Below the pieces are notes generated by a model. That model did not search any database, was not told where the DNA came from, and saw nothing but the letters and a program-made list of their open reading frames with translations. Below, in pieces: positions 30,027-63,242 of a stretch of DNA of 64,000 nt; within the stretch, counting starts at the first letter, position 1; each line of letters begins with the position of its first letter. The stretch covers positions 186,001 through 250,000 of IMG/VR virus record IMGVR_UViG_3300042350_002797; one strand, 5' to 3'. Made by a program: the position numbers and the translations under genes.

Positions 30027-30055
30027 ATTATAAACACATCAGCGCCAGTTGTCAA
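30027..30055 (-). promoter_or_regulatory. Sigma70 promoter; probable leaderless uvsE transcript
   Basis: TTGACA-17-TATAAT with ATG 6 nt after the -10. Confidence 0.8.
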
Positions 30056-43153: not shown

Positions 43154-43375
43154 CTATAATCTGAAGGTAATTCTACCTTTGGTTAGATCGTATGGGCTAA
43201 CTTCTATTCGAACATTGTCACCCAAAATTACTTTGATTTTGTGTTGTTTAAGTTTACCGCCCATATAACAAATAAGTTCATGTGCAGTATCGTCTACTTT
43301 GACTTTAAAAGTACTATTAGGAAGAACATCGACGACTTCTCCGGTGAATTCTATCAGTTCACTGTTTTTAGCCAT
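43154..43375 (-). CDS. infA: Translation initiation factor IF-1
   Basis: IEFTGEVVDVLPN..F.V, GK.....IKVILGD.V.IEVSPYDLTKGRITFR; start MAK at 43375. Confidence 0.93.
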   Translation of the reverse strand: MAKNSELIEFTGEVVDVLPNSTFKVKVDDTAHELICYMGGKLKQHKIKVILGDNVRIEVSPYDLTKGRITFRL

Positions 43376-43538
43376 TTTTTGATATAACAATCGAATTGTC
43401 TTGAACTTTAATAGTCAATTGATCGCCTTCCTTCCAACCGTTTAAGTCTAAAATTTCTTGTGGTATTTTCATAAGTATGTTATCTGGATCCCCTTCAATT
43501 TCTTCGAATATTTCTTCTGATTTAAAAATAAGTTTCAT
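43368..43538 (-). CDS. AbrB/MazE/SpoVT-like DNA-binding protein (56 aa)
   Basis: Not in track. MKLIFKSEEIFEEIEGDPDNILMKIPQEILDLNGWKEGDQLTIKVQDNSIVISKNG*. Confidence 0.7.
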   Translation of the reverse strand: MKLIFKSEEIFEEIEGDPDNILMKIPQEILDLNGWKEGDQLTIKVQDNSIVISKNG

Positions 43539-43595
43539 TTTGATATAAAGTCTTTCTGTGAAGTATAAGTATAATTATATTTTTTGTCAATTAAA

Positions 43596-43844
43596 ATGAA
43601 TAACATAGAGCAGCAAATTTTACAAACAATTAAAGATATGAAGATCGGTAAAGACCAATCTATCACTATGCATTCAACTCTTAAAGAAGATTTAAATTTG
43701 GACAGTTTAAGCTTTACAGAATTGTTGATATCGTTAGAAGAACAGTTTGAAATCGAAGTGGACTTAGATGATCCAGAGTTACCAAAGCTTAATACATTAA
43801 ATGATATCAATGAAGTTATCTCAAAATTAATCAGTCTTAAGTAA
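43596..43844 (+). CDS. acpP: Acyl carrier protein 1
   Basis: EDLNLDSLSFTELLISLEEQFEI (DSL phosphopantetheine Ser); acidic. Confidence 0.9.
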   Translation: MNNIEQQILQTIKDMKIGKDQSITMHSTLKEDLNLDSLSFTELLISLEEQFEIEVDLDDPELPKLNTLNDINEVISKLISLK

Positions 43845-44612
43845 TTTTATCACCCAATAAGTCGGGTCTATTTCCCACCAACGCTTTCCATAGTTGATGT
43901 TTGTAGGATCTCCGTGATGATTATTGTGCCAACTTTCCCCTAACGTAATAGGCCAAATCCAAACAATATTTACACTGTCGTCTTTAGTTTCGAGATTTCT
44001 ATAACCTAGTTTCTTAATGTGAGTCACACTTGTTTGTATATTAAAAACTTGATAGGTAATGAATGCAGGTAGTATTACAGCATATAACCAAAGATTTATA
44101 TCAATTAATAAAAAAGCGGCATGACTGATTAAAAAGATTTTAGCGTAATTTTTATGAAAGAAAATACAATCTTTGTCTTTAAGCAAATCTACAATATGCT
44201 TTGTATTATATTGTCCTTCCTTTAGTTTAAACATCCACCAGATATAACTGTGCCAAAACCCATGATGAGGGCTGTGAGGATCTTTATCTTCATCACTATA
44301 TCTATGATGATAACTTCTGTGTATTGTGGCCCATTGAATAGGACTACCTTGTCCTGATAAATTTCCAAACCAAAGAATTATTATCTTTACCCATCTTTTT
44401 ACTTTAAAACTTTTGTGACTGAACAATCTATGATAGCCGGCGCTTACTCCAATAATTTTAATACAAATGAAACCAATAATATAGTATGCCCACCAATAAG
44501 GAGTATAATCTACAAACAGATTATAAATGCTGTATAATCCTAAAATATGGATAGGAATCACACCACACCAAAGATTACTAAATGATATAATGTTTTTAAA
44601 AATTTGTTTCAT
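43827..44612 (-). CDS. Membrane fatty acid desaturase (delta-9-like)
   Basis: GYHRLFSH, HRSYHH, DPHSP, GESWHNNHH, WWEIDP; start MKQ at 44612 is ATGA-coupled. Confidence 0.9.
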   Translation of the reverse strand: MKQIFKNIISFSNLWCGVIPIHILGLYSIYNLFVDYTPYWWAYYIIGFICIKIIGVSAGYHRLFSHKSFKVKRWVKIIILWFGNLSGQGSPIQWATIHRSYHHRYSDEDKDPHSPHHGFWHSYIWWMFKLKEGQYNTKHIVDLLKDKDCIFFHKNYAKIFLISHAAFLLIDINLWLYAVILPAFITYQVFNIQTSVTHIKKLGYRNLETKDDSVNIVWIWPITLGESWHNNHHGDPTNINYGKRWWEIDPTYWVIKLLKTD

Positions 44613-45151
44613 TTGTGTTTCCAGGAATTCAATAAAGAGTCGTCGCCGTGATATATGATATGTTGCCAACAACTATCATCATCACTATTTGGGCAAGTTT
44701 GATATTTATAGTTGTTGGTATCAAACGTCAAGTCAGAATATTTTTTAAAATCTCTTATTAGCATACTTTGCCAATGGTTGTATTGTCTGCTTACAAATAC
44801 TAATTTTGAATCAGTGTTATTTTGTAACCATTTAACTTGTTCTGACACCATTAAACAGATTTGAGGACTGACAAATTTAGTAATGGGAATTCTCTTTATT
44901 TTCCACATTCTATTCAAAATTCTATAAACTCTATCTGGCCAGCAATCTCTTCGTATAATACTGCTACAATGAGTAGGGTCTCCATTTTCGTCGAACGCTA
45001 TACTAAAAGCTGCTGATCTTTCAAAAAGATACTTGTTGTAATTTACTGCTAATGGATCTGTTTTGTTATTGTGCTGATGTTGTCTTAAATTTTCGAAAAG
45101 TTTGTCTAAGTACGAGTCGGATCCCGGAGTCCAAATTTTAACACTAATCAT
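44609..45151 (-). CDS. Hypothetical protein, possible GNAT-like acyltransferase
   Basis: Between acpS and the desaturase; RVYRILNRMW, LVFVSRQ. The fold is a guess. Confidence 0.4.
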   Translation of the reverse strand: MISVKIWTPGSDSYLDKLFENLRQHQHNNKTDPLAVNYNKYLFERSAAFSIAFDENGDPTHCSSIIRRDCWPDRVYRILNRMWKIKRIPITKFVSPQICLMVSEQVKWLQNNTDSKLVFVSRQYNHWQSMLIRDFKKYSDLTFDTNNYKYQTCPNSDDDSCWQHIIYHGDDSLLNSWKHK

Positions 45152-45507
45152 GTTACTTCCAAAATAGCACTGGCTATGAGATAGTCTCGTTCGTGACTAA
45201 AACTAAGATGACAAGTTGGTCCTGCTAATTGTTCTTTAAACTGTACTGTTGGACGACCTTCGTGATTGGATTTAATTTTAATATTTTTCCAAGTTACTTT
45301 ATCTCGTATTCCTTTTCCAAAAGCCTTGGCAATGGCTTCTTTTCCTGCCCATATTTTAGCCAAATATTGAAATTTTAATTTGTGGTTTTTGAATTCTTCT
45401 AATTCTTCATCTGTGCAAATACGCATTGCAATTTTAGTTAGTCGTAGATCGTTCATCATATGAAAACGATTTAAATCTACAATATCAATTCCGTGTCCTA
45501 ATATCAT
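45148..45507 (-). CDS. acpS: Holo-ACP synthase (4'-phosphopantetheinyl transferase)
   Basis: GHGIDIVD, WAGKEA.AKA.G.G, GRP, LSFSHE. Confidence 0.93.
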   Translation of the reverse strand: MILGHGIDIVDLNRFHMMNDLRLTKIAMRICTDEELEEFKNHKLKFQYLAKIWAGKEAIAKAFGKGIRDKVTWKNIKIKSNHEGRPTVQFKEQLAGPTCHLSFSHERDYLIASAILEVT

Positions 45508-45513
45508 ACAGTA

Positions 45514-45542
45514 ATTATACTTTTTTTAAATCTGTGTGTCAA
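45514..45542 (-). promoter_or_regulatory. Sigma70 promoter; probable leaderless acpS transcript
   Basis: TTGACA-17-TATAAT with ATG 6 nt downstream. Confidence 0.8.
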
Positions 45543-45570
45543 TAGCCTGGTAAATACACCGGAGGATATT

Positions 45571-46380
45571 ATGTTTATAGGACACATTAACGACTTAGAA
45601 ATCGGCCAAGCCAAATCGATTGAAGTTCTTGAAAACAAAAAAGTTTTAATCAATGAAAATGGTGTATACAAAATAGGTAGTAATATTTGCCCTCATCAAA
45701 ATAGCAGAATTATTTCCGGAACACGTACAGAACTTAGATGCCAGTACCACGGATGGTCGTGGAATATGGATGGATCACCTAAAGATTCAGGTGCTAGTAC
45801 TATGTGTAATAAGCAAAAATTACATATGAAAACAGCGTATGAATATAAAGGTCTTTTATTCGAAGAAGAATTAGATTTTTCAATGCTCGAAGAATTAAGT
45901 TTTGAAAATTTAAGATTAGAAGAATTTAGAATCGATACGGTTAATGCTGATCCAAAAATTAGTATGGATATATTTTTAGACGTCGATCATATTCCAATCG
46001 TTCATAACGGAGTCTATGATTTATTAGGAATCGAAGGTAAAGCAGATGTTAAATGGAGTTATGCAGACTGGGGAAGTATGCAGACTGTTAGTGACGAATC
46101 GGGAAAAGTTATTGCTCGTTGGATCGCTATCTATCCTTATACTATGATAGAGTGGCAAGATAAAGCATTGTTTATAACACGGTCTTTCAATGAAACACAA
46201 ATGGCAGTATGGAAATATAAAGATATAACCGAGTCAGAAGAAAACTATAGAACTAATGAAAGTATGTGGGAAAATGCATTTTCACAAGATAAAGCTCAAG
46301 CAGAGCAAATGGTAAGATTTCCTTCTGCTAATTTAGAAGAAGCCAAAATTCATTACAGAGAGTGGTTAAGTAAAAAATGA
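45571..46380 (+). CDS. Rieske non-heme iron oxygenase alpha subunit
   Basis: CPH...CQYHGW (Rieske 2Fe-2S); DVDHIPIVH and FSQD (mononuclear Fe); TAAATA and GGAGG upstream. Confidence 0.88.
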   Translation: MFIGHINDLEIGQAKSIEVLENKKVLINENGVYKIGSNICPHQNSRIISGTRTELRCQYHGWSWNMDGSPKDSGASTMCNKQKLHMKTAYEYKGLLFEEELDFSMLEELSFENLRLEEFRIDTVNADPKISMDIFLDVDHIPIVHNGVYDLLGIEGKADVKWSYADWGSMQTVSDESGKVIARWIAIYPYTMIEWQDKALFITRSFNETQMAVWKYKDITESEENYRTNESMWENAFSQDKAQAEQMVRFPSANLEEAKIHYREWLSKK

Positions 46381-47285
46381 AATTGTTGTATAATGATTAC
46401 ATGCGTAGTTCAGGAAATGGGTCAACTTGGTCAGTAGAAATAGACCCTCCTACTAGATCAGTTAAAAGTTATTTCGAAGAAACTAAAATTGCTTGTGGGT
46501 TAATATATGAGCAAAGAACTGCTCCTTTACAACTATGTTATAGTGGAGGCCTTGATAGTGAATATGTTCTAAGTACGTTATTATACTTAGGCATACCAGT
46601 AGAAGTATTCATTATGAATACTCAATACAATTATCATGAAACCAAATATGCATTTAAATTTTGTGAATCAAAGAACATTACTCCTACCATAGTTGATCTA
46701 GATTATGATAAATTTGTAGAATCTGGTAAACTAATAGAAATAGCAGAATCCATGTGTTGCGCACAGTGGCAAATACCTGCTAATATGTGGCTAGTGGAAC
46801 AATTAACAGGTACAGTTATAATTGGTAATGATCCTCCACATATGAAGTTAAACAAAGAAGATAATCTTTGGTATCTCGATGAAGAGGAAGTTATTCATAG
46901 TCAATTTAATTTTTGGAGAAATCGAGATATACTTGGAACACCTTTTCTGTTAAGCTATACTCCTGAATTAATGTTAAGTTTTTTATTAGATCCGACTATG
47001 GAAAAATTAGCTAATCATGGATTTCCAGGTAAATTAGGAACTAACAGTACTAAAGTTCATGTGTTTAATAGAGACAGCAATTTTAATTTAGAACAACGTG
47101 TTAAACAACACGGATATGAAAATGCTGAAAAAAGTTTGATTTTTAATCATCCTGACATTCAAACTGTGATTAGTTGGAAAGATCGCTGGGGCGGAACTAG
47201 CGACCATCAGTATCATACTGTAGTAGAAAAACTCAGTTCGGGAAAATCTTCTAAAGCTTTTTCAGTATGTCCTTCAAATTCTTAA
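46377..47285 (+). CDS. PP-loop ATP pyrophosphatase (asparagine synthase C-terminal-like)
   Basis: LCYSGGLDSE; no glutaminase domain. Confidence 0.7.
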   Translation: MKLLYNDYMRSSGNGSTWSVEIDPPTRSVKSYFEETKIACGLIYEQRTAPLQLCYSGGLDSEYVLSTLLYLGIPVEVFIMNTQYNYHETKYAFKFCESKNITPTIVDLDYDKFVESGKLIEIAESMCCAQWQIPANMWLVEQLTGTVIIGNDPPHMKLNKEDNLWYLDEEEVIHSQFNFWRNRDILGTPFLLSYTPELMLSFLLDPTMEKLANHGFPGKLGTNSTKVHVFNRDSNFNLEQRVKQHGYENAEKSLIFNHPDIQTVISWKDRWGGTSDHQYHTVVEKLSSGKSSKAFSVCPSNS

Positions 47286-47288
47286 TAT

Positions 47289-47747
47289 ATGAATCAATTA
47301 ACTAACCAAGAAGTTCTTTCAATATTGCCTCATCGTTATCCATTTCTGATGATTGATAAAGTTATCGAATACTCCGACACAGATCTAATAGCAGTGAAAA
47401 ATTTCACAATCAATGAGCCATATGTACAAGGACATTTTCCAAACAATCATATAATGCCAGGTGTAATGATGGTAGAATCTATGGCACAAGCCAGCACAAT
47501 TTTAGGGTTCAAGTACATAGAAAAGAATGCAACTATGGAACAAATTTTGTCACAATTTTCTGGAGGATTTTTGTTTGTAGCTGCTGATGAAGTGAGATTT
47601 AAACGAGTTGTGCATCCTGGAGATCAATTAAAAATATTTTCTAAATTGACTAGATGTGCTAGAACTTTATTTGAATTTGAAACTAGAATAGAAGTTGATA
47701 GGATTATAGTTGCTTCGGCCAAGTTAAAAGCCACTGCTGGTATTTAA
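47289..47747 (+). CDS. fabZ: 3-hydroxyacyl-ACP dehydratase
   Basis: LPHRYPFLMIDKV, KNFTINEP...GHFP...MPGV...ESMAQ, RFKR.V.PGDQL. Confidence 0.95.
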   Translation: MNQLTNQEVLSILPHRYPFLMIDKVIEYSDTDLIAVKNFTINEPYVQGHFPNNHIMPGVMMVESMAQASTILGFKYIEKNATMEQILSQFSGGFLFVAADEVRFKRVVHPGDQLKIFSKLTRCARTLFEFETRIEVDRIIVASAKLKATAGI

Positions 47748-47773
47748 TATTAAATAGCTATATAGGAGGACGT

Positions 47774-48142
47774 ATGGATTTAGAAAATTGGACACCATTG
47801 ACTACGCAAGAAATAGAAAAGAAATTTATTGGAATGATTAATGACTATCTAAAATTAAATTTAGAATATCCTGTAGATCCAAATCTTTCTTTAAAAGATT
47901 TGAGATTAGTTGGGGATACGAAAGTTATTGAACAATTACAAGATGTTGATGAAGAATCATTAGAAATTATAAAAAAGAATTTTGAAATCGATAGCATAGA
48001 TATATTGGAATTAGTAATTCAGATCGAAGAAGAATTTGGCGTAGTAATTGACGATAAAGATGTGGCCACTCTACTTAGATGGGAAGATCTTATTGGTTAT
48101 ATAGCAGATAGTCAAGACCCTAAAAAAATGAAACAAAAATGA
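47774..48142 (+). CDS. Acyl carrier protein 2 (elongated)
   Basis: IDSIDILELVIQIEEEFGVVIDD; 122 aa with extra sequence before the Ser motif. Confidence 0.85.
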   Translation: MDLENWTPLTTQEIEKKFIGMINDYLKLNLEYPVDPNLSLKDLRLVGDTKVIEQLQDVDEESLEIIKKNFEIDSIDILELVIQIEEEFGVVIDDKDVATLLRWEDLIGYIADSQDPKKMKQK

Positions 48143-49317
48143 AACCTGTTTATATAGTTGATTATGCAGTAATAGATACAATAGGATTTGATATAGAATC
48201 GAACTATAAAAATCTTACTCTATTAGCTAAAGGTCCTCAGACCTGCACTAGATACGATGTAACAGAGTATCCTCACATACTCTGTACTAAAGGTTATGAA
48301 ATTTCTCAGTATGATGGACGTAATATTTTTTCAAAGTTGCATAACGATTTATCTGATCAGTTATTATCGAAAGCTACTATTCCATCAGATTCTGCCGTAA
48401 TAGTGAGTGCGTTTGCTCATTCAGGCAACGAAGTAAGAAATGATTTTGATAACTCATTCCGAGGCGGAATGAGCCGATTTAGTCCTACAAAGCTTTTTCT
48501 AAATAATAATGATTTAATGAGTGCTAACATAGCGAAAAAATTAAAATTAGAAGGATTCAGCTCTGGGGTAATGGCAGCGTGTAGTTCTAGTATGTTCAAC
48601 TTACACTATGCTTTCACTTGCATACAATCAGGAGTGATTTCGTCCGCTGTAGTTGGAGCTATAGAAACTCCAATACATCCTTCTGTGCAATATTACTGGC
48701 AATGTACTAGTGCAATTTCTACTCGAGATGGAGGAATCTGTAAACCATTTGATAAGAACAGAGATGGGTTTGTTCAAGCCGAGGGAGGAACATTATGGTT
48801 AATATGCGATGAAGAAACATTGAAAAAATATAATTTAACTCCTAAAGCTAAAATTCTTTCTATAGTGCTGTCTTCTAAATGCTATGATACTGCTACTATG
48901 ACTGCTCACGATAAAACAGGAAAGAGTCAAATTGATACAATTAATAAAGCACTAACTATTGCAAATAAAAAATCGGAAGATATAGCTTTTTTTAATGCAC
49001 ATGCTACTAGTACTTTGATAGGAGACGATATTGAATTAGACGTTTTTCAGCAAAAATTTAAAGACGTTGATATTCCGTGTGTTAGTTTTAAAGGTTATAT
49101 CGGCCACACTATGAGTGCAAGTGGTATGGTTGAATCTGCTTACGGATTAGAAGCATTAAAAAATCAGTATCTGCATCCAAACTACGATTTAACAGATCCA
49201 ATAAGCGACGATCCTAGATTAATTACAAAAGCGATTCCTATCAAAGGAGATACATTTATTAAAGCTTCTTTTGGGTTTGGGGGCAGAACTGCTATAGCAG
49301 TATTTCAAACAATTTAG
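48139..49317 (+). CDS. fabF: Beta-ketoacyl-ACP synthase (FabF/FabB-like)
   Basis: AACSSS (Cys), PFDKNRDGFV..EG, NAHATST..GD (His), K..IGHT..ASG (His), SFGFGG. Confidence 0.9.
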   Translation: MKPVYIVDYAVIDTIGFDIESNYKNLTLLAKGPQTCTRYDVTEYPHILCTKGYEISQYDGRNIFSKLHNDLSDQLLSKATIPSDSAVIVSAFAHSGNEVRNDFDNSFRGGMSRFSPTKLFLNNNDLMSANIAKKLKLEGFSSGVMAACSSSMFNLHYAFTCIQSGVISSAVVGAIETPIHPSVQYYWQCTSAISTRDGGICKPFDKNRDGFVQAEGGTLWLICDEETLKKYNLTPKAKILSIVLSSKCYDTATMTAHDKTGKSQIDTINKALTIANKKSEDIAFFNAHATSTLIGDDIELDVFQQKFKDVDIPCVSFKGYIGHTMSASGMVESAYGLEALKNQYLHPNYDLTDPISDDPRLITKAIPIKGDTFIKASFGFGGRTAIAVFQTI

Positions 49318-49327: not shown

Positions 49328-50161
49328 ATGTACAATCATACTTCAGATACAAATACTGACCCGAGACATTTGTTGCGGTTGAAAATGGAAAAAATCGATG
49401 GATCAAGTTTTATGACAGACGGACCTCCGGCTGGTTACGACTTACCTACCGAATACATTGAAAAAATGAAAGTTATCAGTGAAAAGTATAAACCCATACA
49501 ATGGCTACCGTTGGATATACCTAAAATTGATATAGGCGATCCTAAAGAATTTTTAGAAATTTACGATAGTCAACGTTATCCTGTTGTAAGAATTAAACCT
49601 GATGTAGCAGAACCATGGAGTAAGGAAGATCATCCTTTTAAGCAAGATAGTAGCTGGAATAAAGCAGCATTTAATGGTCTTCATCTATATCAAAATCCTA
49701 TGATTGATCTTAAGCTAAGTACCTTTTACGGAAAAGTTTATCTTGGAGATATTCCTGTTTTCAAAAGGATTATTGAACAAGTGCATGATTATATTCCTCA
49801 TCACCCTTTTATCAGTATATTCATCTGGGAAAGTTTATCGACTATTATTCCTCATAGGGATGCCGCATCATATTGGAAATGTCCTACAGATTTTAGATCT
49901 ATGTTATATGATGAAAATGATAAACCTACTTTGTATGTAGCAGAAGACGGATCAGATGAACCAATCTATATTGACCTTCCTGAGGATACTAATACTTTTT
50001 GTTGGAGCAATGGAAAAATGGTTCATGGATCTGATTATCATGGAAAAAGAAAATTACTACTAATTATGACAGGAATACAGCATACAAGAAAATCTGTAGA
50101 GTTGTTTGATCGCAGTATTGCAAAGTATAAAGACAAATTAAATTATAAATTAGAAATGTAA
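49328..50161 (+). CDS. Putative Fe(II)/2OG-type oxygenase, paralog A
   Basis: PHRD...MVHGSD (HxD...H); WLPLDIP. Confidence 0.55.
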   Translation: MYNHTSDTNTDPRHLLRLKMEKIDGSSFMTDGPPAGYDLPTEYIEKMKVISEKYKPIQWLPLDIPKIDIGDPKEFLEIYDSQRYPVVRIKPDVAEPWSKEDHPFKQDSSWNKAAFNGLHLYQNPMIDLKLSTFYGKVYLGDIPVFKRIIEQVHDYIPHHPFISIFIWESLSTIIPHRDAASYWKCPTDFRSMLYDENDKPTLYVAEDGSDEPIYIDLPEDTNTFCWSNGKMVHGSDYHGKRKLLLIMTGIQHTRKSVELFDRSIAKYKDKLNYKLEM

Positions 50162-51030
50162 TGGATCTAAGTATCTTACAAAAAAAAATTGAAGAGGCGA
50201 AAGTCTCTCAATTTGATTATTCAAAATTAAACACTAGTTACACAAAACTAGGTCCTTCCTTGCATAAAAATGCAAGTTTTATTCAGGCTTCATGGTCACC
50301 CGAGATACCTATTTCTGAATCTTATCTAAAAAAAATAAAGTTATTAGAAGAAAAATATGAATCTATTTTTTGGTTACCTTTAGATATACCTAAAATTCAA
50401 ATAAGCGATTGGAAACTTTTTTTAGAAATTTGGGAAAGAGAAAAAATACCTATTGTTAAAAAAAACGATCCAGATTTTATTCAAGAATTTTACGGAATGC
50501 ATATTGCATCTAACCCATTAATTGACTTTTACTGTCATGATTTGTACGATTCAAAAGGTAAGATGATAGAAAATCAAATTTCGGAAAAAAGCGGATTTAC
50601 TCAAGGAAGAGACAATATAGGTTTATACACTAAAAAACTTTATAAAGATAGATTTTTTAATTCTTTAGTTAGTAATATTATGGCAACTTTTCCTATTAGT
50701 GTTATTAATACTATATCTATATTCGAAGTTATGAATGATGTAGCACCTCATAGGGAGGAAACTTGGTACTGGAAATGTCCTACTGAATTTAGAATAAATC
50801 TTTATGATGAAAATAAAACCCCTGTATTTTACGTAACGGATATCGAAAGCGGTGAAACGAGATATATAGATCTACCTCAAGATACAAACAGTTTTTGTTG
50901 GAGTAATGGAACTAAATTATACGGGGGTGATTATCACGGAAAAAAGAATTTTCAAATAGTTGTTAACGCGATATGGGATACAGCAAAGTTAGATAATTTG
51001 CTAAGTACAAGTTTAAAAAAATACGGATAA
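50161..51030 (+). CDS. Paralog B of the preceding oxygenase-like protein
   Basis: WLPLDIPKI, PHREETWYWKCPTEFR, DLPQDTNSFCWSNG..LYGGDYHG. Confidence 0.55.
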   Translation: MDLSILQKKIEEAKVSQFDYSKLNTSYTKLGPSLHKNASFIQASWSPEIPISESYLKKIKLLEEKYESIFWLPLDIPKIQISDWKLFLEIWEREKIPIVKKNDPDFIQEFYGMHIASNPLIDFYCHDLYDSKGKMIENQISEKSGFTQGRDNIGLYTKKLYKDRFFNSLVSNIMATFPISVINTISIFEVMNDVAPHREETWYWKCPTEFRINLYDENKTPVFYVTDIESGETRYIDLPQDTNSFCWSNGTKLYGGDYHGKKNFQIVVNAIWDTAKLDNLLSTSLKKYG

Positions 51031-51031
51031 A

Positions 51032-51571
51032 ATGGAATACTGGAAATATTTAGAATTAGATAATGTAGAAAAGATTCAAGAAAAAACTTTAACGTTTATT
51101 CGAGAAAAAACAGATTTTATGGATAAATCTAAATATAAAGGTCCATATATTAATTTGCCCTTTTTCGATTACAATAAGGATGTTCCAGAGCTTCAAGAAA
51201 GTTTTTTAAATTATGGGTTGTATGTCACTGGTATTCATATATTTTTAATGTGGAATAACACCGATTGTATTCCCCATAAAGATTATACAGATGCCATTGG
51301 TAGAGTGAATATCCCTATATTAAATTGTCAAGGATCTAAAACCATATTTTATAAAAATTTAAAATCTAAAAGATTAATGTTGCCTACTAGGTCTCCATTT
51401 TATATGACTATAAACAAAGATTACGAAGAAGTTGGCGGAGTTGAAATAGATCGTCCTACTATTGTCAGAATAAGTGAAGGACATACCGTAGTAATGAATG
51501 ATAAAAGTTTTCCTAGAATTACACTTACTGTTTCAACAATTCCTGATGTAGGATTATTATTGGACGATTAA
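51032..51571 (+). CDS. Putative Fe(II)/2OG oxygenase (cupin/DSBH)
   Basis: PHKD, VNIPILNC, EGHTV, PRITLTV. Confidence 0.6.
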   Translation: MEYWKYLELDNVEKIQEKTLTFIREKTDFMDKSKYKGPYINLPFFDYNKDVPELQESFLNYGLYVTGIHIFLMWNNTDCIPHKDYTDAIGRVNIPILNCQGSKTIFYKNLKSKRLMLPTRSPFYMTINKDYEEVGGVEIDRPTIVRISEGHTVVMNDKSFPRITLTVSTIPDVGLLLDD

Positions 51572-58207: not shown

Positions 58208-58286
58208 TGGTCGGGGAAGAGGGATTCGAACTCTCGATCTCCTGCTCCCAAAGCAGGCGCTTTAAACCAGACTAAGCTACACCCCG
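58208..58286 (-). tRNA. tRNA-Pro(TGG)
   Basis: Cloverleaf; CCTGC-TT TGG GA-GCAGG; encoded CCA. Confidence 0.95.
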
Positions 58287-58291
58287 AAACT

Positions 58292-58367
58292 TGGAGCGGG
58301 TGATCAGGTTCGAACTGACGACATTCTGCTTGGAAGGCAGACGCTCTACCAACTGAGCTACACCCGC
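58292..58367 (-). tRNA. tRNA-Gly(TCC)
   Basis: TCTGC-CT TCC AA-GCAGA; ends TCCA. Confidence 0.95.
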
Positions 58368-58371
58368 ATGT

Positions 58372-58572
58372 GTTCTTGTTAGGCTACTAATCCTCATTAG
58401 CCCCTAACTGAGTTGTTACCCTGTCCCCTGACGTTCCTTATGGCTTGTGCCAGCTAAACCTACGATTTTTCTTGCACCCATGTAAGCGGGTTCTGAGGCG
58501 TCATCGTATGAGCCCTGGTATTTTGGTGACACCAACCACCCCCTTTAATAACGCAGAAGGGACTGCGAGGTT
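58372..58572 (-). ncRNA. Candidate ~200-nt pseudoknotted ncRNA between tRNA-Thr and tRNA-Gly
   Basis: GC-rich, multiple complementary segments, H-type pseudoknot near the 5' end and a hairpin at the 3' end. Confidence 0.5.
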
Positions 58573-58574
58573 CT

Positions 58575-58650
58575 TGGTGCTGGTCGCAGGACTCGAACCC
58601 GCCACCTACGGATTACAAATCCGTTGCTCTACCTGATGAGCTAGACCAGC
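58575..58650 (-). tRNA. tRNA-Thr(TGT)
   Basis: ACGGA-TT TGT AA-TCCGT; CCA. Confidence 0.95.
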
Positions 58651-58657
58651 GTAAACT

Positions 58658-58849
58658 TTATTCTACTACTGTTTCTTCAACTTTGTGTCCGTATTTAATT
58701 AAAGTATTAATGCGACGTTGAATTTTCATTTTGTGCTTAGGACGACAAGATCCGAGCAATTCATTTAATTGTTTAACATTCAAAGGACCAAGACGTGTTT
58801 TACCAGTCTTGGTTTTCATAGGATCACGTTTAAAACTTTTAGCTGCCAT
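58658..58849 (-). CDS. Small basic hypothetical protein
   Basis: 63 aa, RBS GAGGA; KTKTGKTRLGPLN. Confidence 0.6.
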   Translation of the reverse strand: MAAKSFKRDPMKTKTGKTRLGPLNVKQLNELLGSCRPKHKMKIQRRINTLIKYGHKVEETVVE

Positions 58850-59076
58850 TATTCCTCATCCTTAAATTCTTCAAGCAATTTTGCCTGCCATTCTGATTCG
58901 GATAAGTTATGTAGTCCAGTACAATATCCGCTGGCACTACGACCACATCCGCAAGGGACTTGATTTTCTTCTATAGTACTCATATTTTTACCTTTATTAA
59001 AAATAGCATCCCAGTTTTTATCATAAGTCGATTGACTTACACTAAAAGGTCTAGGACGAGATCCTTTGCCTGCCAT
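58849..59076 (-). CDS. Small protein with C-terminal CDGSH-like Fe-S motif
   Basis: MAGKGSRPRP...NWDAIF, then internal M and CGCGRSASGYCTGLH. Confidence 0.6.
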   Translation of the reverse strand: MAGKGSRPRPFSVSQSTYDKNWDAIFNKGKNMSTIEENQVPCGCGRSASGYCTGLHNLSESEWQAKLLEEFKDEE

Positions 59077-59077
59077 T

Positions 59078-59248
59078 TTATTCTGCTGTCCCAGTGTTAC
59101 GATCTGCTTTACTAGCCTTAGGCCTGATAGCTGCTGCTAGTTCTGCTTGAATCATTGCACGTTTAAATTCGTAACTACGAGGAGGCAACATGCTGGCCAT
59201 TATCATTTTACTAGACTTACTTAGTTTAAAATTACCTTTAGCTTTCAT
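59078..59248 (-). CDS. Small basic hypothetical protein
   Basis: MKAKGNFKLSKSSK...FKRAMIQAELA; GGAG upstream. Confidence 0.55.
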   Translation of the reverse strand: MKAKGNFKLSKSSKMIMASMLPPRSYEFKRAMIQAELAAAIRPKASKADRNTGTAE

Positions 59249-59414
59249 TTTTACGATTCTCCGGAATAAATTCATTCATTGCTACAACTAGCCATCCAGT
59301 AAATCCAGTAACATAGGCACTGAACATGTTTGGATTATCAAAATTAGTTCCCATACCAATAGCAGTAAAAACTACTATTAATACAGGAGTCCACTTCTTT
59401 AAGAATAATAGCAT
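59238..59414 (-). CDS. Small membrane protein (58 aa)
   Basis: Not in track. MLLFLKKWTPVLIVVFTAIGMG...NES*. Confidence 0.5.
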   Translation of the reverse strand: MLLFLKKWTPVLIVVFTAIGMGTNFDNPNMFSAYVTGFTGWLVVAMNEFIPENRKNES

Positions 59415-59435
59415 TTGCTTCTTTCAAAAAAAAAT

Positions 59436-59527
59436 TGGCGGAGATAGTTGGATTCGAACCAACGGTAGAGTTTAATCCCTACGACAGTTTAGCAAACTGC
59501 TGCCTTAAGCCTCTCGGCCATATCTCC
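59436..59527 (-). tRNA. tRNA-Ser(GCT)
   Basis: GCAGT-TT GCT AA-ACTGT; long variable arm; ends GCCA. Confidence 0.95.
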
Positions 59528-59535
59528 GTAAAACT

Positions 59536-59742
59536 TTACTTCTGATATTTCTGATTCATTTCGTCTATAGTTTGATCCCACTTTAATTGTGCTAAAGCTA
59601 ATGTATATACAAGATAACCAGCAAATGAAAGTGCCAACACTGCTACTGCCCAATTAGGCAAATAACTCATTACAAAACCGGTAACAAAACCAGTTAACAT
59701 TACTCCCGCAGTTATTAGAGCTGCTTTAAGTTTTATGTTCAT
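59536..59742 (-). CDS. Small membrane protein
   Basis: Two hydrophobic segments; RBS AAGGA. Confidence 0.55.
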   Translation of the reverse strand: MNIKLKAALITAGVMLTGFVTGFVMSYLPNWAVAVLALSFAGYLVYTLALAQLKWDQTIDEMNQKYQK

Positions 59743-59828
59743 TTCTGTTTCCTTTCAAGAACTTAACTAATGAACCTATATATTACATGAAGTTCAAAAA
59801 AAGTTCAAGAACTATTTTTACCAAAATC

Positions 59829-59927
59829 TGGTGTGGTCGGTAGGCTTCGAACCTACAAGAGCTTGGCTTTGCCTGTGCCCATCCCCGACCCAACGAGTGG
59901 GAGCTTTTCCAGTTTGCTTACGACCAC
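59829..59927 (-). ncRNA. tRNA-like RNA with non-canonical anticodon arm
   Basis: Acceptor GTGGTCG/CGACCAC-ACCA, D-arm and T-arm GTAGG-TTCGAAG-CCTAC are present, but there is no 5-bp/7-nt anticodon arm. Confidence 0.75.
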
Positions 59928-59932
59928 AGCTA

Positions 59933-59961
59933 ATTATATAGTCGTAAATGGTAACTGTCAA
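59933..59961 (-). promoter_or_regulatory. Consensus sigma70 promoter for the tRNA-like RNA
   Basis: TTGACA-17-TATAAT; predicted start site at about the RNA 5' end. Confidence 0.85.
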
Positions 59962-59963
59962 GC

Positions 59964-60143
59964 TTATTCTGCTCTCCATTCTACTCTGCCATATTGATCA
60001 ATATGAGCAATACTTTGCTGTCTTTTTACTTCAACGTATTCTCGACGATCTTCTATAATAGTCCCGCCTCTCTGAACCAATTCAGAGATTTTTATTTTAG
60101 CAACTTGTGTTGCTGGTTCAAATTTTTTAAATTTAATTTCCAT
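59964..60143 (-). CDS. Small hypothetical protein (59 aa)
   Basis: Not in track. MEIKFKKFEPATQ...IDQYGRVEWRAE*; RBS AAGGAG. Confidence 0.65.
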   Translation of the reverse strand: MEIKFKKFEPATQVAKIKISELVQRGGTIIEDRREYVEVKRQQSIAHIDQYGRVEWRAE

Positions 60144-60157
60144 AATTATCTCCTTAT

Positions 60158-60232
60158 TGGCCGGTCCGGAGAGATTCGAACTCCCGACAGCTGGTTTCGA
60201 AGACCAGAACTCTTCCGCTGAGCTACGGACCG
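60158..60232 (-). tRNA. tRNA-Arg(TCG)
   Basis: CTGGT-CT TCG AA-ACCAG; ends GCCA. Confidence 0.9.
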
Positions 60233-60238
60233 AAAACT

Positions 60239-60313
60239 TGGAGCGGATAATCAGATTCGAACTGATGACCTACACGTTGGCAACGTGTCGCACTACCACT
60301 GTGCTATACCCGC
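60239..60313 (-). tRNA. tRNA-Gly(GCC)
   Basis: ACACG-TT GCC AA-CGTGT; ends TCCA. Confidence 0.95.
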
Positions 60314-60317
60314 TTAT

Positions 60318-60399
60318 TGGTGCGCATGGAGGGACTCGAACCCCCACCCCGAAAGACTAGTTCCTAAGACTAGCGTGTCTACCATTCCACCACATGCGC
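60318..60399 (-). tRNA. tRNA-Leu(TAG)
   Basis: CTAGT-CT TAG GA-ACTAG; variable arm; ends ACCA. Confidence 0.93.
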
Positions 60400-60422
60400 A
60401 TAAAACTATTTAAAAATAAACT

Positions 60423-60500
60423 TGGAGCTTAGGGTCGGATTTGAACCGACGACTTTACGGTTTTGCAGACCGTTCCATTGGACCACTCTGGCACCTAAGC
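60423..60500 (-). tRNA. tRNA-Cys(GCA)
   Basis: ACGGT-CT GCA AA-ACCGT; U73. Confidence 0.93.
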
Positions 60501-60501
60501 G

Positions 60502-61062
60502 TTAAAATTCTACCCACTCACGAAATCTTACACTCAACGATAATCGTTGTTGTGATCCTGAGTTGAATATACTATGAGGAACATCTATTCTATACAATGT
60601 CGGTTCTGTCAAATAATAGCTGTCAATTTCTTCTACATCCTCTAACTCGAATACATGCCCTTCAGGCAAAGAATTATATTCTAAATATTCTTTAGATTCA
60701 ACTTTTTTCTTATCAGAGTTTTTAGTTATAAATTTTTCTTGATCTTTAACTTTATAAAAACTAGTTCTAGTTTCCGTTGTACAATTGTAAATTGGTATGT
60801 TAAGTGAAAAAGGAAAAGTTATTTTCCAATCAGTATGAATTGGCCATAATTTATTCGGAGGAACCGAAACAACTGCAACATCATTAACATTACTCCAATC
60901 AGTATATATTGAAATACCATCGACTAAAGGTTTACATTTTTGAAATAAGATCGGATCATGACTTCTAAAACCTCCATGTATTTTATAATCATCAGGTAGA
61001 TTCTTATAAACAATATCGCCAATTTTTTCCCAATCGGGTATTTTCACAGATTTGTATAGCAT
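60502..61062 (-). CDS. Putative Fe(II)/2OG oxygenase (paralog of the 51032 gene)
   Basis: IHTD, LNIPIYNC, PTLYRIDVPHSI.N, RLSLSVRF. Confidence 0.6.
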   Translation of the reverse strand: MLYKSVKIPDWEKIGDIVYKNLPDDYKIHGGFRSHDPILFQKCKPLVDGISIYTDWSNVNDVAVVSVPPNKLWPIHTDWKITFPFSLNIPIYNCTTETRTSFYKVKDQEKFITKNSDKKKVESKEYLEYNSLPEGHVFELEDVEEIDSYYLTEPTLYRIDVPHSIFNSGSQQRLSLSVRFREWVEF

Positions 61063-61072
61063 AAGTATATAT

Positions 61073-61708
61073 ATGACAAATTTTTATTCACTTTCTTTTC
61101 CTGTATTGCCTGACAATTTAAATCGACAACTTTTACAATATGCTCTCGATAAAAAAGATACATCAGGGTTCGACGTAATTAACATCAACGAAGTAAACCA
61201 GGAGACTTTAACATTTAAAGACTTTCATAAAGAAACAAACACAAATATAACTTCTTATTTTATAATCCCATTATCTGAAGAATTAAAAAAAGAAATACAC
61301 TCTTTTTTAGGAGATTCTTTGTTTCCGCATTCTAAAATAGATTATTATTTACATTATATAGTCGGAGATTCAAAATTTGTTCCCCATCGAGATCCTGGAA
61401 GGACAGTTTGTTTTCTTTATAATTTAACTGATGACAATGCCGATACAATTTGGTTTAAATCTAAAAATAATGATAAAAAAATAATGTATCTTTTAAATGA
61501 GATCGATCAGATTGAGTCTAAAAAATTTGAAAAGCACCAGTGGTATTTGTTAAACACAGATGAAATACATGCTGTTTTTGGTATTAACGGACCTCGTATA
61601 GGATTGACCTGCAATCTAACTACGAGTTTTTCTAATATAACTACCTTCGAATCTTTTGTAAAACAATACGACAATTTACTGGTTGCGGAGAACAGGAATC
61701 GAACCTGA
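61073..61708 (+). CDS. Putative Fe(II)/2OG oxygenase
   Basis: PHRD, T.WF, WYLLNT..IHAV, PRIGL; 3' end overlaps tRNA-Met on the opposite strand. Confidence 0.6.
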   Translation: MTNFYSLSFPVLPDNLNRQLLQYALDKKDTSGFDVININEVNQETLTFKDFHKETNTNITSYFIIPLSEELKKEIHSFLGDSLFPHSKIDYYLHYIVGDSKFVPHRDPGRTVCFLYNLTDDNADTIWFKSKNNDKKIMYLLNEIDQIESKKFEKHQWYLLNTDEIHAVFGINGPRIGLTCNLTTSFSNITTFESFVKQYDNLLVAENRNRT

Positions 61709-61756
61709 TGTCTTCAGCTTATGAGACTGACGAGTAAACCGTTTCTCCCCTCCGCC
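61680..61756 (-). tRNA. tRNA-Met(CAT), initiator-like
   Basis: TCAGT-CT CAT AA-GCTGA; G1:A72 mismatch; A11:U24. Confidence 0.85.
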
Positions 61757-61760
61757 ATTA

Positions 61761-62588: not shown

Positions 62589-62878
62589 AGATCTTCTACA
62601 TCTTTTCCATTATCTACATAAAATTTATCTTGTTTGTGTTTACGTTCCTGCATAGTTTCTTCTTTGAACCATTTTCGAGGATTACCACACATATAACACT
62701 TGGGATCACCGCAGTTTAGTATATGTTTCTTATGATTACGATGCGGTTGTTCTAAATACTTCCACTTACCATTGTGATGCATATAGTAATCTTTGGCTAT
62801 ACGCACTTGTCTTTCGATTGCCACTTCATCTTTATGAAGTCTCTTGCTATGATGAAACTTATCTAATTCTGTACTCAT
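62585..62878 (-). CDS. Hypothetical Cys/His-rich protein
   Basis: NCGDPKCYMCGNPRK; RBS AGGAG. Confidence 0.6.
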   Translation of the reverse strand: MSTELDKFHHSKRLHKDEVAIERQVRIAKDYYMHHNGKWKYLEQPHRNHKKHILNCGDPKCYMCGNPRKWFKEETMQERKHKQDKFYVDNGKDVEDL

Positions 62879-62892
62879 AACAATCTCCTAGT

Positions 62893-62982
62893 TGGCGGAA
62901 GCGGTGAGATTCGAACTCACGGAACATTTCTGTTCGTCTGTTTTCAAGACAGGTGCAATAAACCGGACTCTGCCACACTTCC
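62893..62982 (-). tRNA. tRNA-Ser(TGA)
   Basis: CTGT-CT TGA AA-ACAG; long variable arm; ends GCCA. Confidence 0.93.
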
Positions 62983-63001
62983 ATAATACTTATACTAATA
63001 T

Positions 63002-63093: not shown

Positions 63094-63112
63094 ATATTTG
63101 GTAGGAAAAATT

Positions 63113-63186: not shown

Positions 63187-63242
63187 TTAAATTCTCTAAG
63201 ATAAGAATTTCGTTTTGTATCTTTTTTGTATCGTCTGTAGTT

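What the first reader, a model, noticed from the sequence alone, without database searches (positions are those of the whole stretch)
45505..45575. Divergent control region suggests ACP activation comes early and synthesis late
Leftward, TTGACA-17-TATAAT (45514-45542) sits 6 nt from the acpS ATG, giving a host-sigma70, leaderless unit of acpS, the GNAT-like gene and a desaturase. Rightward, TAAATA (45551) and a GGAGG RBS precede the Rieske-PP-loop-fabZ operon, and a second TAAATA (47751) precedes ACP2-KS. TAAATA also precedes structural genes in this window (e.g. TATAAATA 9771, 11762, 34181). Inference: the cluster is wired into the phage programme and its product is made late, which would fit a virion- or lysis-linked role. 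TAAATA is short and AT-rich, so chance matches are possible.
Basis: partly seen in the sequence, partly recalled or inferred. Interest (0 to 1): 0.6.

Follow-up and report, generated by a model that had tools for sequence, protein, structure and literature searches.

The report
Early/late divergent promoter region, phage lipid genes
A 63-base gap in an uncultured 365-kb freshwater phage holds a perfect host-type promoter for the ACP-activating enzyme, back-to-back with a conserved weak-looking copy of the phage's late promoter for a Rieske/fatty-acid-synthase operon, which is an ordinary T4-style arrangement and has no expression data yet.

Summary

**Leftward promoter.** TTGACA-17-TATAAT lies 6 nt from the acpS ATG. 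Perfect sites of this kind occur 8 times in the window against 0.16 expected. The promoter and its leaderless geometry are conserved in 7-8 related phages.

**Phage late system.** The genome (364,554 bp, lake metagenome) encodes a gp55-type late sigma. Its late motif is ATAAATA: 49 sense against 7 antisense copies upstream of genes. Eight of 10 sampled downstream genes are tail or virion genes.

**Rightward sites.** Both differ from that heptamer at its first base (GGTAAATA at 45549-45556, TTAAATA at 47750-47756). Three things still point to function:
- GGTAAATA is invariant across the close clade.
- [G/T]TAAATA precedes the ACP gene in 13 of 13 relatives.
- 43 of 86 Rieske homologues carry NTAAATA and none has a sigma70 site.

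TAAATA is also the most avoided non-palindromic hexamer. On antisense strands ATAAATA has O/E 0.03 and the variants 0.28-0.37, so the variants look weaker but real.

**Verdict.** "AcpS early, operon late" is partly supported for this phage. It is not universal, because 9 relatives carry a sigma70-type leaderless promoter before fabZ. No RNA data were found. The virion or lysis role is untested. This is a known kind of control region.

The parts
45537..45542 (-). -35 hexamer TTGACA of the leftward promoter
   Evidence: Read. Listed as a 12/12 site. TGTCAA is present in 6 of 8 aligned relatives.
45514..45519 (-). -10 hexamer TATAAT, 17-nt spacer, 6 nt from the ATG
   Evidence: The ATTATAC block is nearly invariant in alignment A5.
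45505..45507 (-). acpS ATG, predicted to be the 5' end of a leaderless mRNA
   Evidence: Geometry read. The AcpS models align from residue 1 (TIGR00516). The same N6 geometry occurs in 7-8 relatives and at 4 other sigma70 sites in the genome.
45148..45507 (-). acpS, holo-ACP synthase (119 aa)
   Evidence: Pfam ACPS E 6.6e-20. TIGR00516 scores 86 bits against a cut-off of 59.8.
44609..45151 (-). 180-aa gene of unknown function, with 4-nt ATGA overlaps to both neighbours
   Evidence: ORF coordinates. No family or PDB match. Homologues found in 24 related loci.
43827..44612 (-). fatty-acid desaturase (261 aa counted from the ATG at 44612)
   Evidence: Pfam FA_desaturase E 5e-16. NCBIfam DesA family E 1.6e-16, far below its cut-off (60.5 against 400 bits). 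ATGA overlap read.
45549..45556 (+). GGTAAATA, a late-promoter-like element with one mismatch to the genome's ATAAATA heptamer
   Evidence: Read. Invariant in 8 of 8 aligned relatives and also in L002, L028, L034 and L035. NTAAATA precedes 43 of 86 Rieske homologues.
45561..45565 (+). GGAGG ribosome-binding site, predicted to lie at the very 5' end of the rightward mRNA
   Evidence: Read. TAAATA-N4-6-GGAGG is conserved in the closest relatives (L002, L028, L029, L031-L035).
45571..46380 (+). Rieske [2Fe-2S] oxygenase-like protein (269 aa)
   Evidence: Pfam Rieske E 6.2e-12. PDB matches to Rieske oxygenase alpha subunits. Found in 123 related loci.
46377..47285 (+). PP-loop (QueC / Asn-synthase-like) protein (302 aa)
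   Evidence: SGGLDS motif. Atlas neighbours carry QueC or Asn_synthase domains. No Pfam or NCBIfam hit of its own.
47289..47747 (+). FabZ dehydratase (152 aa). It lacks the sigma70-type leaderless promoter that 9 relatives have.
   Evidence: NF000582 scores 146 bits against a cut-off of 113. Upstream comparison.
47750..47756 (+). TTAAATA, a second late-like element 17 nt before the ACP ATG
   Evidence: Read. TAAATA and AGGAG are invariant in 13 of 13 relatives, the preceding base is always G or T, and the site lies 15-21 nt from the ATG.
47774..48142 (+). acyl carrier protein ACP2 (122 aa)
   Evidence: Pfam PP-binding 24.5 bits against a cut-off of 20.8.
48139..49317 (+). FabF/FabB-like ketosynthase (392 aa)
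   Evidence: Pfam ketoacyl-synt N- and C-terminal domains. TIGR03150 E 2.7e-46, below its cut-off.
49328..51571 (+). three tightly packed genes of unknown function (277, 289 and 179 aa) that end the rightward unit
   Evidence: ORFs. No family hits. Homologues in 10-18 related loci.
44703..44710 (-). perfect TATAAATA inside the 180-aa gene, 90 nt before the desaturase ATG: a possible internal late promoter
   Evidence: ATAAATA lies at the same distance in L108, GTAAATA lies nearby in L050 and L051, and the motif is absent in L002, L032, L101 and L039.
43596..43844 (+). second acyl carrier protein ACP1 (82 aa), convergent with the desaturase
   Evidence: PF00550 28.4 bits. Sequence read. No recognisable promoter motif upstream.

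Best explanation
The 63-bp gap (45508-45570) is a back-to-back pair of promoters of the two classes this T4-like jumbo phage uses.

**Leftward.** A consensus host sigma70 promoter starts transcription on the A of the acpS ATG. The mRNA is leaderless. Through ATGA overlaps it also carries the 180-aa gene and the desaturase.

**Rightward.** GGTAAATA is a sub-optimal version of the phage's gp55-type late promoter (ATAAATA). It should start an mRNA at about 45561-45563, right at the GGAGG, for the Rieske, PP-loop and FabZ genes. A second sub-optimal site (TTAAATA, 47750-47756) reinforces ACP2, KS and the three unknown genes.

**Consequence.** The two predicted starts are about 55 bp apart. The late element lies at -42 to -49 of the leftward promoter, so two polymerases probably cannot sit there together. 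The inferred programme is AcpS from host RNA polymerase soon after infection, and the operon at modest level once the phage sigma is made.

**Shown:** the motifs, their enrichment and avoidance, their conservation, the gp55 homologue, and the link between promoter class and gene class.
**Inferred:** the start sites, the timing, promoter strength and promoter competition.
For: **Sigma70 class**
- 8 perfect sites in the window against 0.16 expected; 25 in the genome, 22 of them intergenic.
- None of 10 sampled downstream genes is structural: UvsX, HNH endonuclease, exonuclease, SbcC, GTP cyclohydrolase and a Lon-like protease among them.
- The gp55-like gene itself has TTGACA-17-TATTAT 20 nt upstream.

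**acpS promoter**
- It scores at least 10/12 in 9 of 13 distinct upstream contexts (12 relatives plus the window's own). The N6 leaderless geometry holds in 7, or 8 counting L038. Invariant blocks are seen in A5.
- Five sigma70 sites in the genome sit 6-7 nt from an ATG.

**Late class**
- A gp55 homologue is encoded at G000:C1:97406-98227 (T4 gp55 E 1.7e-6; phrog_12791 E 2.4e-80).
- ATAAATA is the most enriched intergenic 7-mer, with 49 sense against 7 antisense copies upstream of genes.
- Its distance to the ATG is 15-33 nt, or 4-7 nt for a leaderless class.
- 8 of 10 sampled downstream genes are tail sheath, tube, fibre, baseplate or virion proteins.

**Variant sites**
- [CGT]TAAATA occurs 32 times sense against 11 antisense.
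- On the antisense strand of genes, O/E is 0.03 for ATAAATA, 0.28 for GTAAATA, 0.29 for TTAAATA and 0.37 for CTAAATA.
- CTAAATA precedes two virion structural genes.

**Comparative evidence**
- GGTAAATA is invariant in the close clade while its flanks vary.
- 43 of 86 Rieske homologues have a sense NTAAATA, and none has a sigma70 site of 10/12 or better.
- The ACP site is conserved in 13 of 13 relatives.
- No plus-strand sigma70-like site of 10/12 or better lies upstream of the Rieske gene in 45148-45570.

**Literature**
- T4 late promoters are TATAAATA at -13 to -6, and phage Aeh1 uses CTAAATA (PMC1524935).
- Jumbo phages CBB and GAP32 use ATAAATA with a gp55-like sigma (PMC5259590).
Against: - There are no transcript data. 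No RNA run holding the region was listed, and the one metatranscriptome from the same sample laid nothing.
- Both cluster sites miss the best-conserved heptamer at its first base. GTAAATA alone is only weakly enriched upstream of genes (9 sense against 4 antisense, 5.5 expected).
- The base after the 47751 site is G, which never follows ATAAATA in the 49 canonical sites.
- No T4 gp45 homologue was found, and gp33 was not searched, so the activation mechanism may differ from T4's.
- Nine relatives have a sigma70-type promoter before fabZ. L108 has a late-type motif before acpS. Timing is therefore not fixed across the family.
- Whether sigma70 promoters are shut off late in this phage is unknown.
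Confidence: 0.6

Rival explanations
1. The rightward element is a real promoter, but not a late one. [G/T]TAAATA would be a separate class, read by host holoenzyme as a poor or extended -10, or by another phage factor. Expression would then be middle or continuous, with no clean split from acpS.
For: - The first base is never A in 13 of 13 ACP sites, and it is G throughout the close Rieske clade. That conservation could mark a distinct specificity.
- TGG precedes TAAATA in the window and several relatives, which resembles an extended -10.
- Relatives put a sigma70-type promoter inside the same operon.
Against: - TAAATA lacks the T at the last -10 position, and there is no -35.
- The TG is not conserved: L002, L028, L032, L034 and L035 have AGG, CGG or similar.
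- More distant Rieske homologues carry canonical ATAAATA at the same place (20 of 43).
- GGTAAATA precedes no other gene in this genome, so there is no sign of a class.
- CTAAATA variants precede virion genes.
Confidence: 0.2
2. GGTAAATA is conserved for the leftward promoter, not the rightward one. Its complement TATTTACC lies at -42 to -49 of the acpS promoter, where an UP element would sit. In some relatives it is the -35 itself (TTTACC).
For: - In L002, L028, L034 and L035 the leftward -10 lies 16-17 nt from GGTAAA, so TTTACC serves as the -35.
- Its position relative to TGTCAA is fixed at 8 nt in 6 of 8 aligned relatives (9 nt in L032).
Against: - The element keeps its distance to the Rieske SD and ATG (14-17 nt in the closest relatives) while its distance to the leftward start changes.
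- NTAAATA precedes Rieske homologues that have no divergent sigma70 promoter at all.
- The same hexamer is conserved before ACP2, where there is no divergent promoter.
Confidence: 0.1
3. The rightward TAAATA sites are chance AT-rich matches. The operon would be transcribed from something not recognised here.
For: - The hexamer is short.
- GTAAATA upstream-of-gene counts are close to expectation.
Against: - The hexamer is 2.5-fold depleted genome-wide.
- It is invariant at both sites across relatives whose flanking bases have diverged.
Confidence: 0.04

Closest known systems
T4 late promoters (TATAAATA at -13 to -6, read by gp55-RNA polymerase) and their variants in T4-like phages (PMC1524935)
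   Same: - The phage encodes a gp55-family sigma.
- The motif is an A/T octamer or heptamer with no -35.
- It precedes tail, baseplate and virion genes.
- The -13 position is loose, as in RB49, KVP40 and S-PM2.
- A changed -12 base has a precedent in Aeh1 (CTAAATA).
   Different: - The two cluster sites carry G or T at -12, against this genome's own consensus A.
- No gp45 homologue was found, and gp33 was not searched.
- Many late sites lie 5 nt from the ATG (leaderless) or start the mRNA at the SD.
Promoter sets of the jumbo phages vB_PcaM_CBB and GAP32 (PMC5259590)
   Same: - Genome of about 350-380 kb.
- RpoD-like consensus promoters clustered before small early ORFs.
- ATAAATA before structural genes.
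- A gp55-like sigma with no gp33 or gp45 detected.
   Different: - This is an uncultured freshwater phage with no close GenBank phage relative.
- CBB's third motif (TGAAACG with a TATA -10) was not seen here by eye; a brief scan turned up no clear third motif.
- The promoters here flank a fatty-acid-synthase-like cluster not reported for CBB or GAP32.
Leaderless mRNAs from consensus promoters (for example lambda cI from PRM; from my own knowledge)
   Same: The -10 hexamer ends 6 nt before the ATG, so +1 is the A of the start codon. There is no SD.
   Different: Here the arrangement recurs about 24 times, across both early and late promoter classes of one phage. None has been mapped experimentally.
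Bacterial type II fatty-acid synthesis genes (acpS, fabZ, acpP, fabF) and cyanophage lipid desaturases (from my own knowledge)
   Same: AcpS and FabZ score above NCBIfam cut-offs. ACP, KS and the desaturase domains score above Pfam cut-offs.
   Different: - KS, ACP and the desaturase fall far below NCBIfam equivalog cut-offs.
- The set lacks recognisable FabD, FabG, FabI and FabH.
- It is joined to a Rieske plus PP-loop pair that is far more widespread among these phages (123 and 71 loci, against 17-18 for the FAS genes).

Membership tests
Sigma70 (RpoD) consensus promoter, T4-like early class | -35 TTGACA, a 17 +/- 1 bp spacer, and -10 TATAAT | tested here: met
   A 12/12 match with a 17-bp spacer at 45542-45514 on the minus strand.
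Sigma70 (RpoD) consensus promoter, T4-like early class | Over-represented, intergenic, and upstream of non-structural (early-type) genes | tested here: met
   8 sites against 0.16 expected in the window. 22 of 25 are intergenic. None of 10 sampled downstream genes is structural.
Sigma70 (RpoD) consensus promoter, T4-like early class | Transcript start about 7 nt after the -10, appearing early in infection | not testable with these tools
   No RNA run holds the region. The phage is uncultured.
gp55-type (T4-like) late promoter | The phage encodes a gp55-family late sigma | tested here: met
   T4 gp55 matches G000:C1:97520-97795 at E 1.7e-6. The 273-aa ORF hits phrog_12791, 'sigma factor for late transcription', at E 2.4e-80.
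gp55-type (T4-like) late promoter | Match to the late consensus (T4 TATAAATA; this genome [G/A/T]ATAAATA[not G]) | tested here: not met
   - 45549-45556 is GGTAAATA: 6 of 8 to T4, 6 of 7 to the genome's heptamer.
- 47750-47756 is TTAAATA followed by G.
- Both keep the TAAATA core, which is the unit the genome avoids.
gp55-type (T4-like) late promoter | The motif class precedes late or structural genes, in sense orientation, at promoter distance | tested here: met
   - Canonical class: 49 sense against 7 antisense, and 8 of 10 sampled genes are structural.
- Variant class: 32 against 11, and 2 of 10 sampled genes are virion proteins.
- The Rieske site lies 14 nt and the ACP site 17 nt from the ATG, at or just below the 15-33 nt class.
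gp55-type (T4-like) late promoter | Co-activator gp33 and sliding clamp gp45 | tested here: inconclusive
   T4 gp45 found nothing at E <= 10. gp33 was not searched. CBB likewise lacks detectable homologues (PMC5259590).
gp55-type (T4-like) late promoter | Late, replication-coupled transcript starting about 6 nt after the motif | not testable with these tools
   No transcript data.
Leaderless mRNA | The promoter places +1 on the A of the start codon, there is no SD, and the annotated ATG is the true start | tested here: met
   Six nt lie between TATAAT and the ATG, with no SD. AcpS models align from residue 1. The geometry is conserved in 7-8 relatives.
Leaderless mRNA | Mapped 5' end at the AUG | not testable with these tools
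   No RNA data.
Type II FAS-like gene set | AcpS, FabZ, ACP and KS domains above curated cut-offs | tested here: met
   - TIGR00516: 86 bits against a cut-off of 59.8.
- NF000582: 146 against 113.
- PF00550: 24.5 against 20.8.
- PF00109 and PF02801: 74 and 70 against 20.8.
- KS and ACP are below NCBIfam equivalog cut-offs.

The most novel reading that the evidence does not exclude
[G/T]TAAATA may be a deliberately kept, sub-optimal subclass of gp55-type promoter that freshwater jumbo phages reserve for metabolic (lipid or Rieske) modules. Set back-to-back with a consensus leaderless sigma70 promoter, it would form a mutually exclusive switch: the ACP-priming enzyme is made first, and its carrier and synthase partners follow at a tuned low level after the sigma change.
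Probability: 0.3. Interest if true: 0.55.

Novelty: new member of a known kind. Interest (0 to 1): 0.4.

Why it matters
If the wiring is right, a widespread group of uncultured freshwater jumbo phages runs a lipid-related gene set on the phage's own clock. More than 120 related contigs carry the Rieske gene. The priming enzyme would be made by host polymerase and the rest by the phage sigma, so the product would serve the phage's late stage rather than general host boosting.

The promoter grammar worked out here has practical use for annotating and timing genes in these phages without cultures. It consists of ATAAATA, graded avoidance of NTAAATA, and frequent leaderless starts.

The control region itself follows the T4, CBB and GAP32 pattern, so it is not surprising to a specialist.

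Tried and rejected
- **Expression data.** It listed only a 2-million-letter metatranscriptome from the same lake sample, and laying that gave zero coverage. This is not evidence of silence.
- **GenBank phages.** No record resembles the cluster DNA. KS hits are weak and mostly host-like fragments. ACP2 has no hit and ACP1 only weak ones. The report of an ACP in Eneladusvirus virions (PMC7760394) therefore cannot be transferred to this phage.
- **gp45.** No homologue was found.
- **'GNAT-like' label for the 180-aa gene.** There is no support for it. The protein is also unrelated to the true GNAT next to the Rieske unit in L003.
- **Rightward sigma70 promoter.** No candidate of 10/12 or better lies upstream of the Rieske gene in 45148-45570. 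The extended -10 reading (TGG-TAAATA) was rejected because the TG is not conserved.
- **Operator-like repeats in the gap.** The only inverted repeat (45493-45508 with 45570-45585) reflects the two proteins' similar N-termini, M-[I/F]-[L/I]-G-H. The 5' region of the rightward mRNA folds no better than shuffles (z = 0.02).
- **A third promoter class.** A look through promoter-less upstream regions gave no clear motif. My gene calls are rough, so this is weak.
- **Internal TATAAATA at 44703.** It is conserved at the same distance in L108 but absent in L002 and others, and it lies in coding sequence. Left open.
- **Literature.** Searches found no description of phage FAS-like clusters of this kind.
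Full report
**What the window is.** The window is bases 186,001-250,000 of a single 364,554-bp viral contig, 36.3% G+C, rated complete by CheckV. The same-sample run found for it is labelled lake water metagenome. It has no close relative among GenBank phages. It carries tail sheath, tube, baseplate and fibre genes, UvsX, SbcC and exonuclease genes, and 17 tRNA genes in the window alone.

**The observation.** Every feature is at the stated place.
- On the minus strand, TTGACA (45542-45537), 17 nt, TATAAT (45519-45514), 6 nt, then the acpS ATG (45507).
- On the plus strand, TAAATA (45551-45556, context GGTAAATAC), GGAGG (45561-45565) and the Rieske ATG (45571).
- The second TAAATA is at 47751-47756 (context TTAAATAG). 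It is followed by AGGAGG and the ACP ATG at 47774.

Gene identities mostly hold:
- AcpS (TIGR00516, 86 bits against 59.8) and a desaturase.
- A Rieske protein and FabZ (146 bits against 113).
- An ACP and a FabF-like KS.
- The 302-aa protein has an SGGLDS PP-loop, and its Atlas neighbours carry QueC or Asn-synthase domains.
- The 'GNAT-like' label for the 180-aa protein has no support.
- Of the three 'TATAAATA' sites cited before structural genes, one is TATAAATA and two are GATAAATA.

**The leftward promoter.** Perfect TTGACA-N16-18-TATAAT occurs 8 times in the window against 0.16 expected. It occurs 25 times in the genome, and 22 of those are intergenic. With one mismatch allowed there are 73 sites. 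One subclass at the genome ends carries an extended consensus before small ORFs.

Ten sampled downstream genes include a recombinase, nucleases, a GTP cyclohydrolase and a Lon-like protease. None is structural. The late-sigma gene itself has such a promoter.

Five of these sites lie 6-7 nt from an ATG. That puts +1 on the A of the start codon. For acpS the ATG is certainly the true start, because the AcpS models align from residue 1 and no SD precedes it.

In 12 distinct relatives plus the window's own copy, a sigma70-type site of at least 10/12 precedes acpS in 9 of the 13. The N6 leaderless geometry is kept in 7, or 8 counting L038. In alignment A5 the CAT, the ATTATAC block and most of TGTCAA are conserved while the spacer drifts.

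acpS, the 180-aa gene and the desaturase are joined by ATGA overlaps. I regard this promoter as real (about 0.9). Its 'early' timing is inferred by analogy with T4.

**The phage's late system.** T4 gp55 finds a homologue at E 1.7e-6. The 273-aa ORF matches phrog_12791, 'sigma factor for late transcription', at E 2.4e-80.

The most enriched intergenic 7-mer is ATAAATA.
- Of 69 copies, 43 are intergenic and 34 of those point at a start within 60 nt.
- Within 52 nt upstream of 415 rough gene calls there are 49 sense copies against 7 antisense.
- The logo is [G/A/T]ATAAATA followed by any base except G, with no upstream element.
- The distance to the ATG falls in two groups: 15-33 nt, and 4-7 nt. 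The second group fits T4's -13 to -6 geometry with +1 on the ATG.
- Eight of 10 sampled downstream genes are tail sheath, tail tube, tail fibre, baseplate or virion proteins.

This is the pattern described for T4-like phages (PMC1524935) and for the jumbo phages CBB and GAP32 (PMC5259590).

**Are the two cluster sites late promoters?** Both miss the heptamer at its first base. On its own GTAAATA is only weakly enriched upstream of genes: 9 sense against 4 antisense, with 5.5 expected. Three lines of evidence raise the odds.

1. *Avoidance.* TAAATA is the most under-represented non-palindromic hexamer in the genome. Its O/E is 0.39, rank 5 of 3,739, behind four restriction-like palindromes. On the antisense strand of genes, where stop codons cannot explain a deficit, ATAAATA occurs 3 times against 109 expected (0.03). 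GTAAATA is at 0.28, TTAAATA at 0.29 and CTAAATA at 0.37. The variants are therefore selected against, but about ten times less strongly. That fits weaker promoter activity. Pooled relatives show the same depletion.

2. *Variant sites behave like promoters.* They occur 32 times sense against 11 antisense, with the same spacings as canonical sites. Two of them (CTAAATA) precede virion structural genes. One of these lies back-to-back with the sigma70 promoter of the gp55 gene, the same layout as here.

3. *Comparison with relatives.* More than 120 related loci were recovered.
   - In the close clade (65-100% protein identity) GGTAAATA is invariant while both flanks vary.
   - Its distance to the SD and ATG is kept even where the leftward side has been rebuilt (L002, L028, L034, L035).
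   - Across 86 distinct Rieske upstream regions, 43 carry a sense NTAAATA 3-35 nt from the ATG. The first base is A in 20, G in 14, T in 7 and C in 2. Forty lie directly behind a same-strand ORF, 3 have nothing, and none has a sigma70 site of 10/12 or better.
   - Before ACP2, TAAATA and AGGAG are the only invariant blocks in 13 of 13 relatives. The preceding base is always G or T.

I put the rightward element as a functional, probably weak, late-type promoter at about 0.7.

**How the region probably works.** Taking +1 of acpS as 45507, the late element occupies -42 to -49 of the leftward promoter. The predicted rightward start (about 45562, at the GGAGG) is about 55 bp away. Polymerase at one promoter should therefore hinder the other.

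The expected sequence of events is as follows. Host holoenzyme makes the leaderless acpS / 180-aa / desaturase message. The gp55-like sigma is itself transcribed from a sigma70 promoter. Once it is made, it directs modest transcription of the Rieske, PP-loop and FabZ genes, boosted at 47750 for ACP2, KS and three unknown genes. The unit ends at 51571 against a convergent gene.

Starts at the SD, or on the ATG, are normal for this phage's late genes.

The split is lineage-specific.
- Nine of 13 relatives have TTGACT-17-TA[T/C]AAT 5-6 nt before the fabZ ATG. The window has lost this.
- L108 has TTAAATA-N5-ATG before acpS.
- L002 has a second desaturase inserted at the head of the leftward unit.
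- A perfect TATAAATA inside the 180-aa gene, 90 nt before the desaturase start, may add late desaturase expression. It recurs at the same distance in L108 but not in L002.
- The Rieske plus PP-loop pair is far more widespread (123 and 71 loci) than the FAS genes (17-18 loci). The 'operon' is probably two modules joined.
- A second ACP (43596-43844, plus strand) has no recognisable promoter.
- No RNA evidence could be obtained.
- Nothing here bears on a virion or lysis role. A published virion-associated ACP in Eneladusvirus (PMC7760394) shows no detectable sequence link to these ACPs.

**Verdict.** This is a well-documented new example of the T4, CBB and GAP32 early/late promoter grammar. Two mildly unusual traits stand out: conserved sub-optimal late sites, and heavy use of leaderless starts. 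Interest 0.4.

Noticed in passing
genome-wide; window examples at 30027-30055 (-), 45514-45542 (-), 28287-28293 (+), 63720-63726 (+): About 24 genes look leaderless. Five sigma70 sites lie 6-7 nt from an ATG. Ten ATAAATA and nine NTAAATA sites lie 4-7 nt from an ATG. That is an unusually high share for a T4-like phage.
   Followed up: partly
window 43154-43390 (-): The phage encodes a translation initiation factor IF-1 homologue (Pfam eIF-1a E 4.9e-19), close to the leaderless acpS unit. IF1 genes are known in huge phages (PMC7162821). A link to leaderless translation is speculation.
   Followed up: no
whole genome (G000): The four most avoided hexamers are the palindromes AGCGCT, GTGCAC, CTGCAG and CGATCG (O/E 0.05-0.32), and GCATGC is also low. 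This points to restriction avoidance and could help guess the host. Relatives avoid ACGCGT, GTGCAC and CGTACG.
   Followed up: no
L002:9688-9728, and the same place in L028, L029, L031, L033, L035, L036, L053, L108; window 47255-47291: A sigma70-type promoter (TTGACT-17-TA[T/C]AAT) sits 5-6 nt before the fabZ ATG in 9 relatives. Part of it lies inside the end of the PP-loop gene. It is degenerate in the window.
   Followed up: partly
L002:7184-7942 (-): An 84%-identical relative has a second fatty-acid desaturase gene between acpS and the control region. There acpS lies behind an internal TTGACA-17-AATAAT site 134 nt upstream.
   Followed up: partly
window 45571-47285, and 123 / 71 related loci: The Rieske and PP-loop (QueC-like) genes travel together in many freshwater phage contigs that lack the ACP, KS and FabZ genes. 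In L003 the Rieske gene follows an NMO/FabK-like gene with a leaderless ATAAATA promoter. The chemistry of this pair is unknown.
   Followed up: partly
window 45493-45508 and 45570-45585: A 16-nt inverted repeat (81% complementary) brackets the control region, because AcpS and the Rieske protein both begin M-[I/F]-[L/I]-G-H. This is probably a coincidence of protein N-termini.
   Followed up: no
G000:C1:98248-98283 (outside the window): A second back-to-back early/late pair. A sigma70 promoter for the gp55-like sigma gene abuts an outward CTAAATA before a virion structural gene (phrog_12050).
   Followed up: partly
G000:C1:252589-252617 (outside the window): A perfect sigma70 promoter whose 17-nt spacer contains ATAAATA in the same orientation. 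It may be a dual early/late start.
   Followed up: no
window 43539-43595: Another divergent gap. TTGACA-17-TATACT drives a 56-aa gene leftward. ACP1 (43596-43844) starts rightward with no SD, no TAAATA, and only a lone TATAAT 20 nt upstream.
   Followed up: no
window 58208-63718 (-): A block of 17 tRNA genes, including two tRNA-Pro(tgg) and an Ile(tat). Perfect sigma70 promoters lie at 57560 and 59933.
   Followed up: no
G000:C1:1-2100 and 356000-364554: The sigma70 promoters at both genome ends share a longer consensus (ttttGGTTGACA ... ggTGc-TATAAT-atacaca) before very small ORFs. This looks like an immediate-early region that may continue across the contig ends.
   Followed up: no
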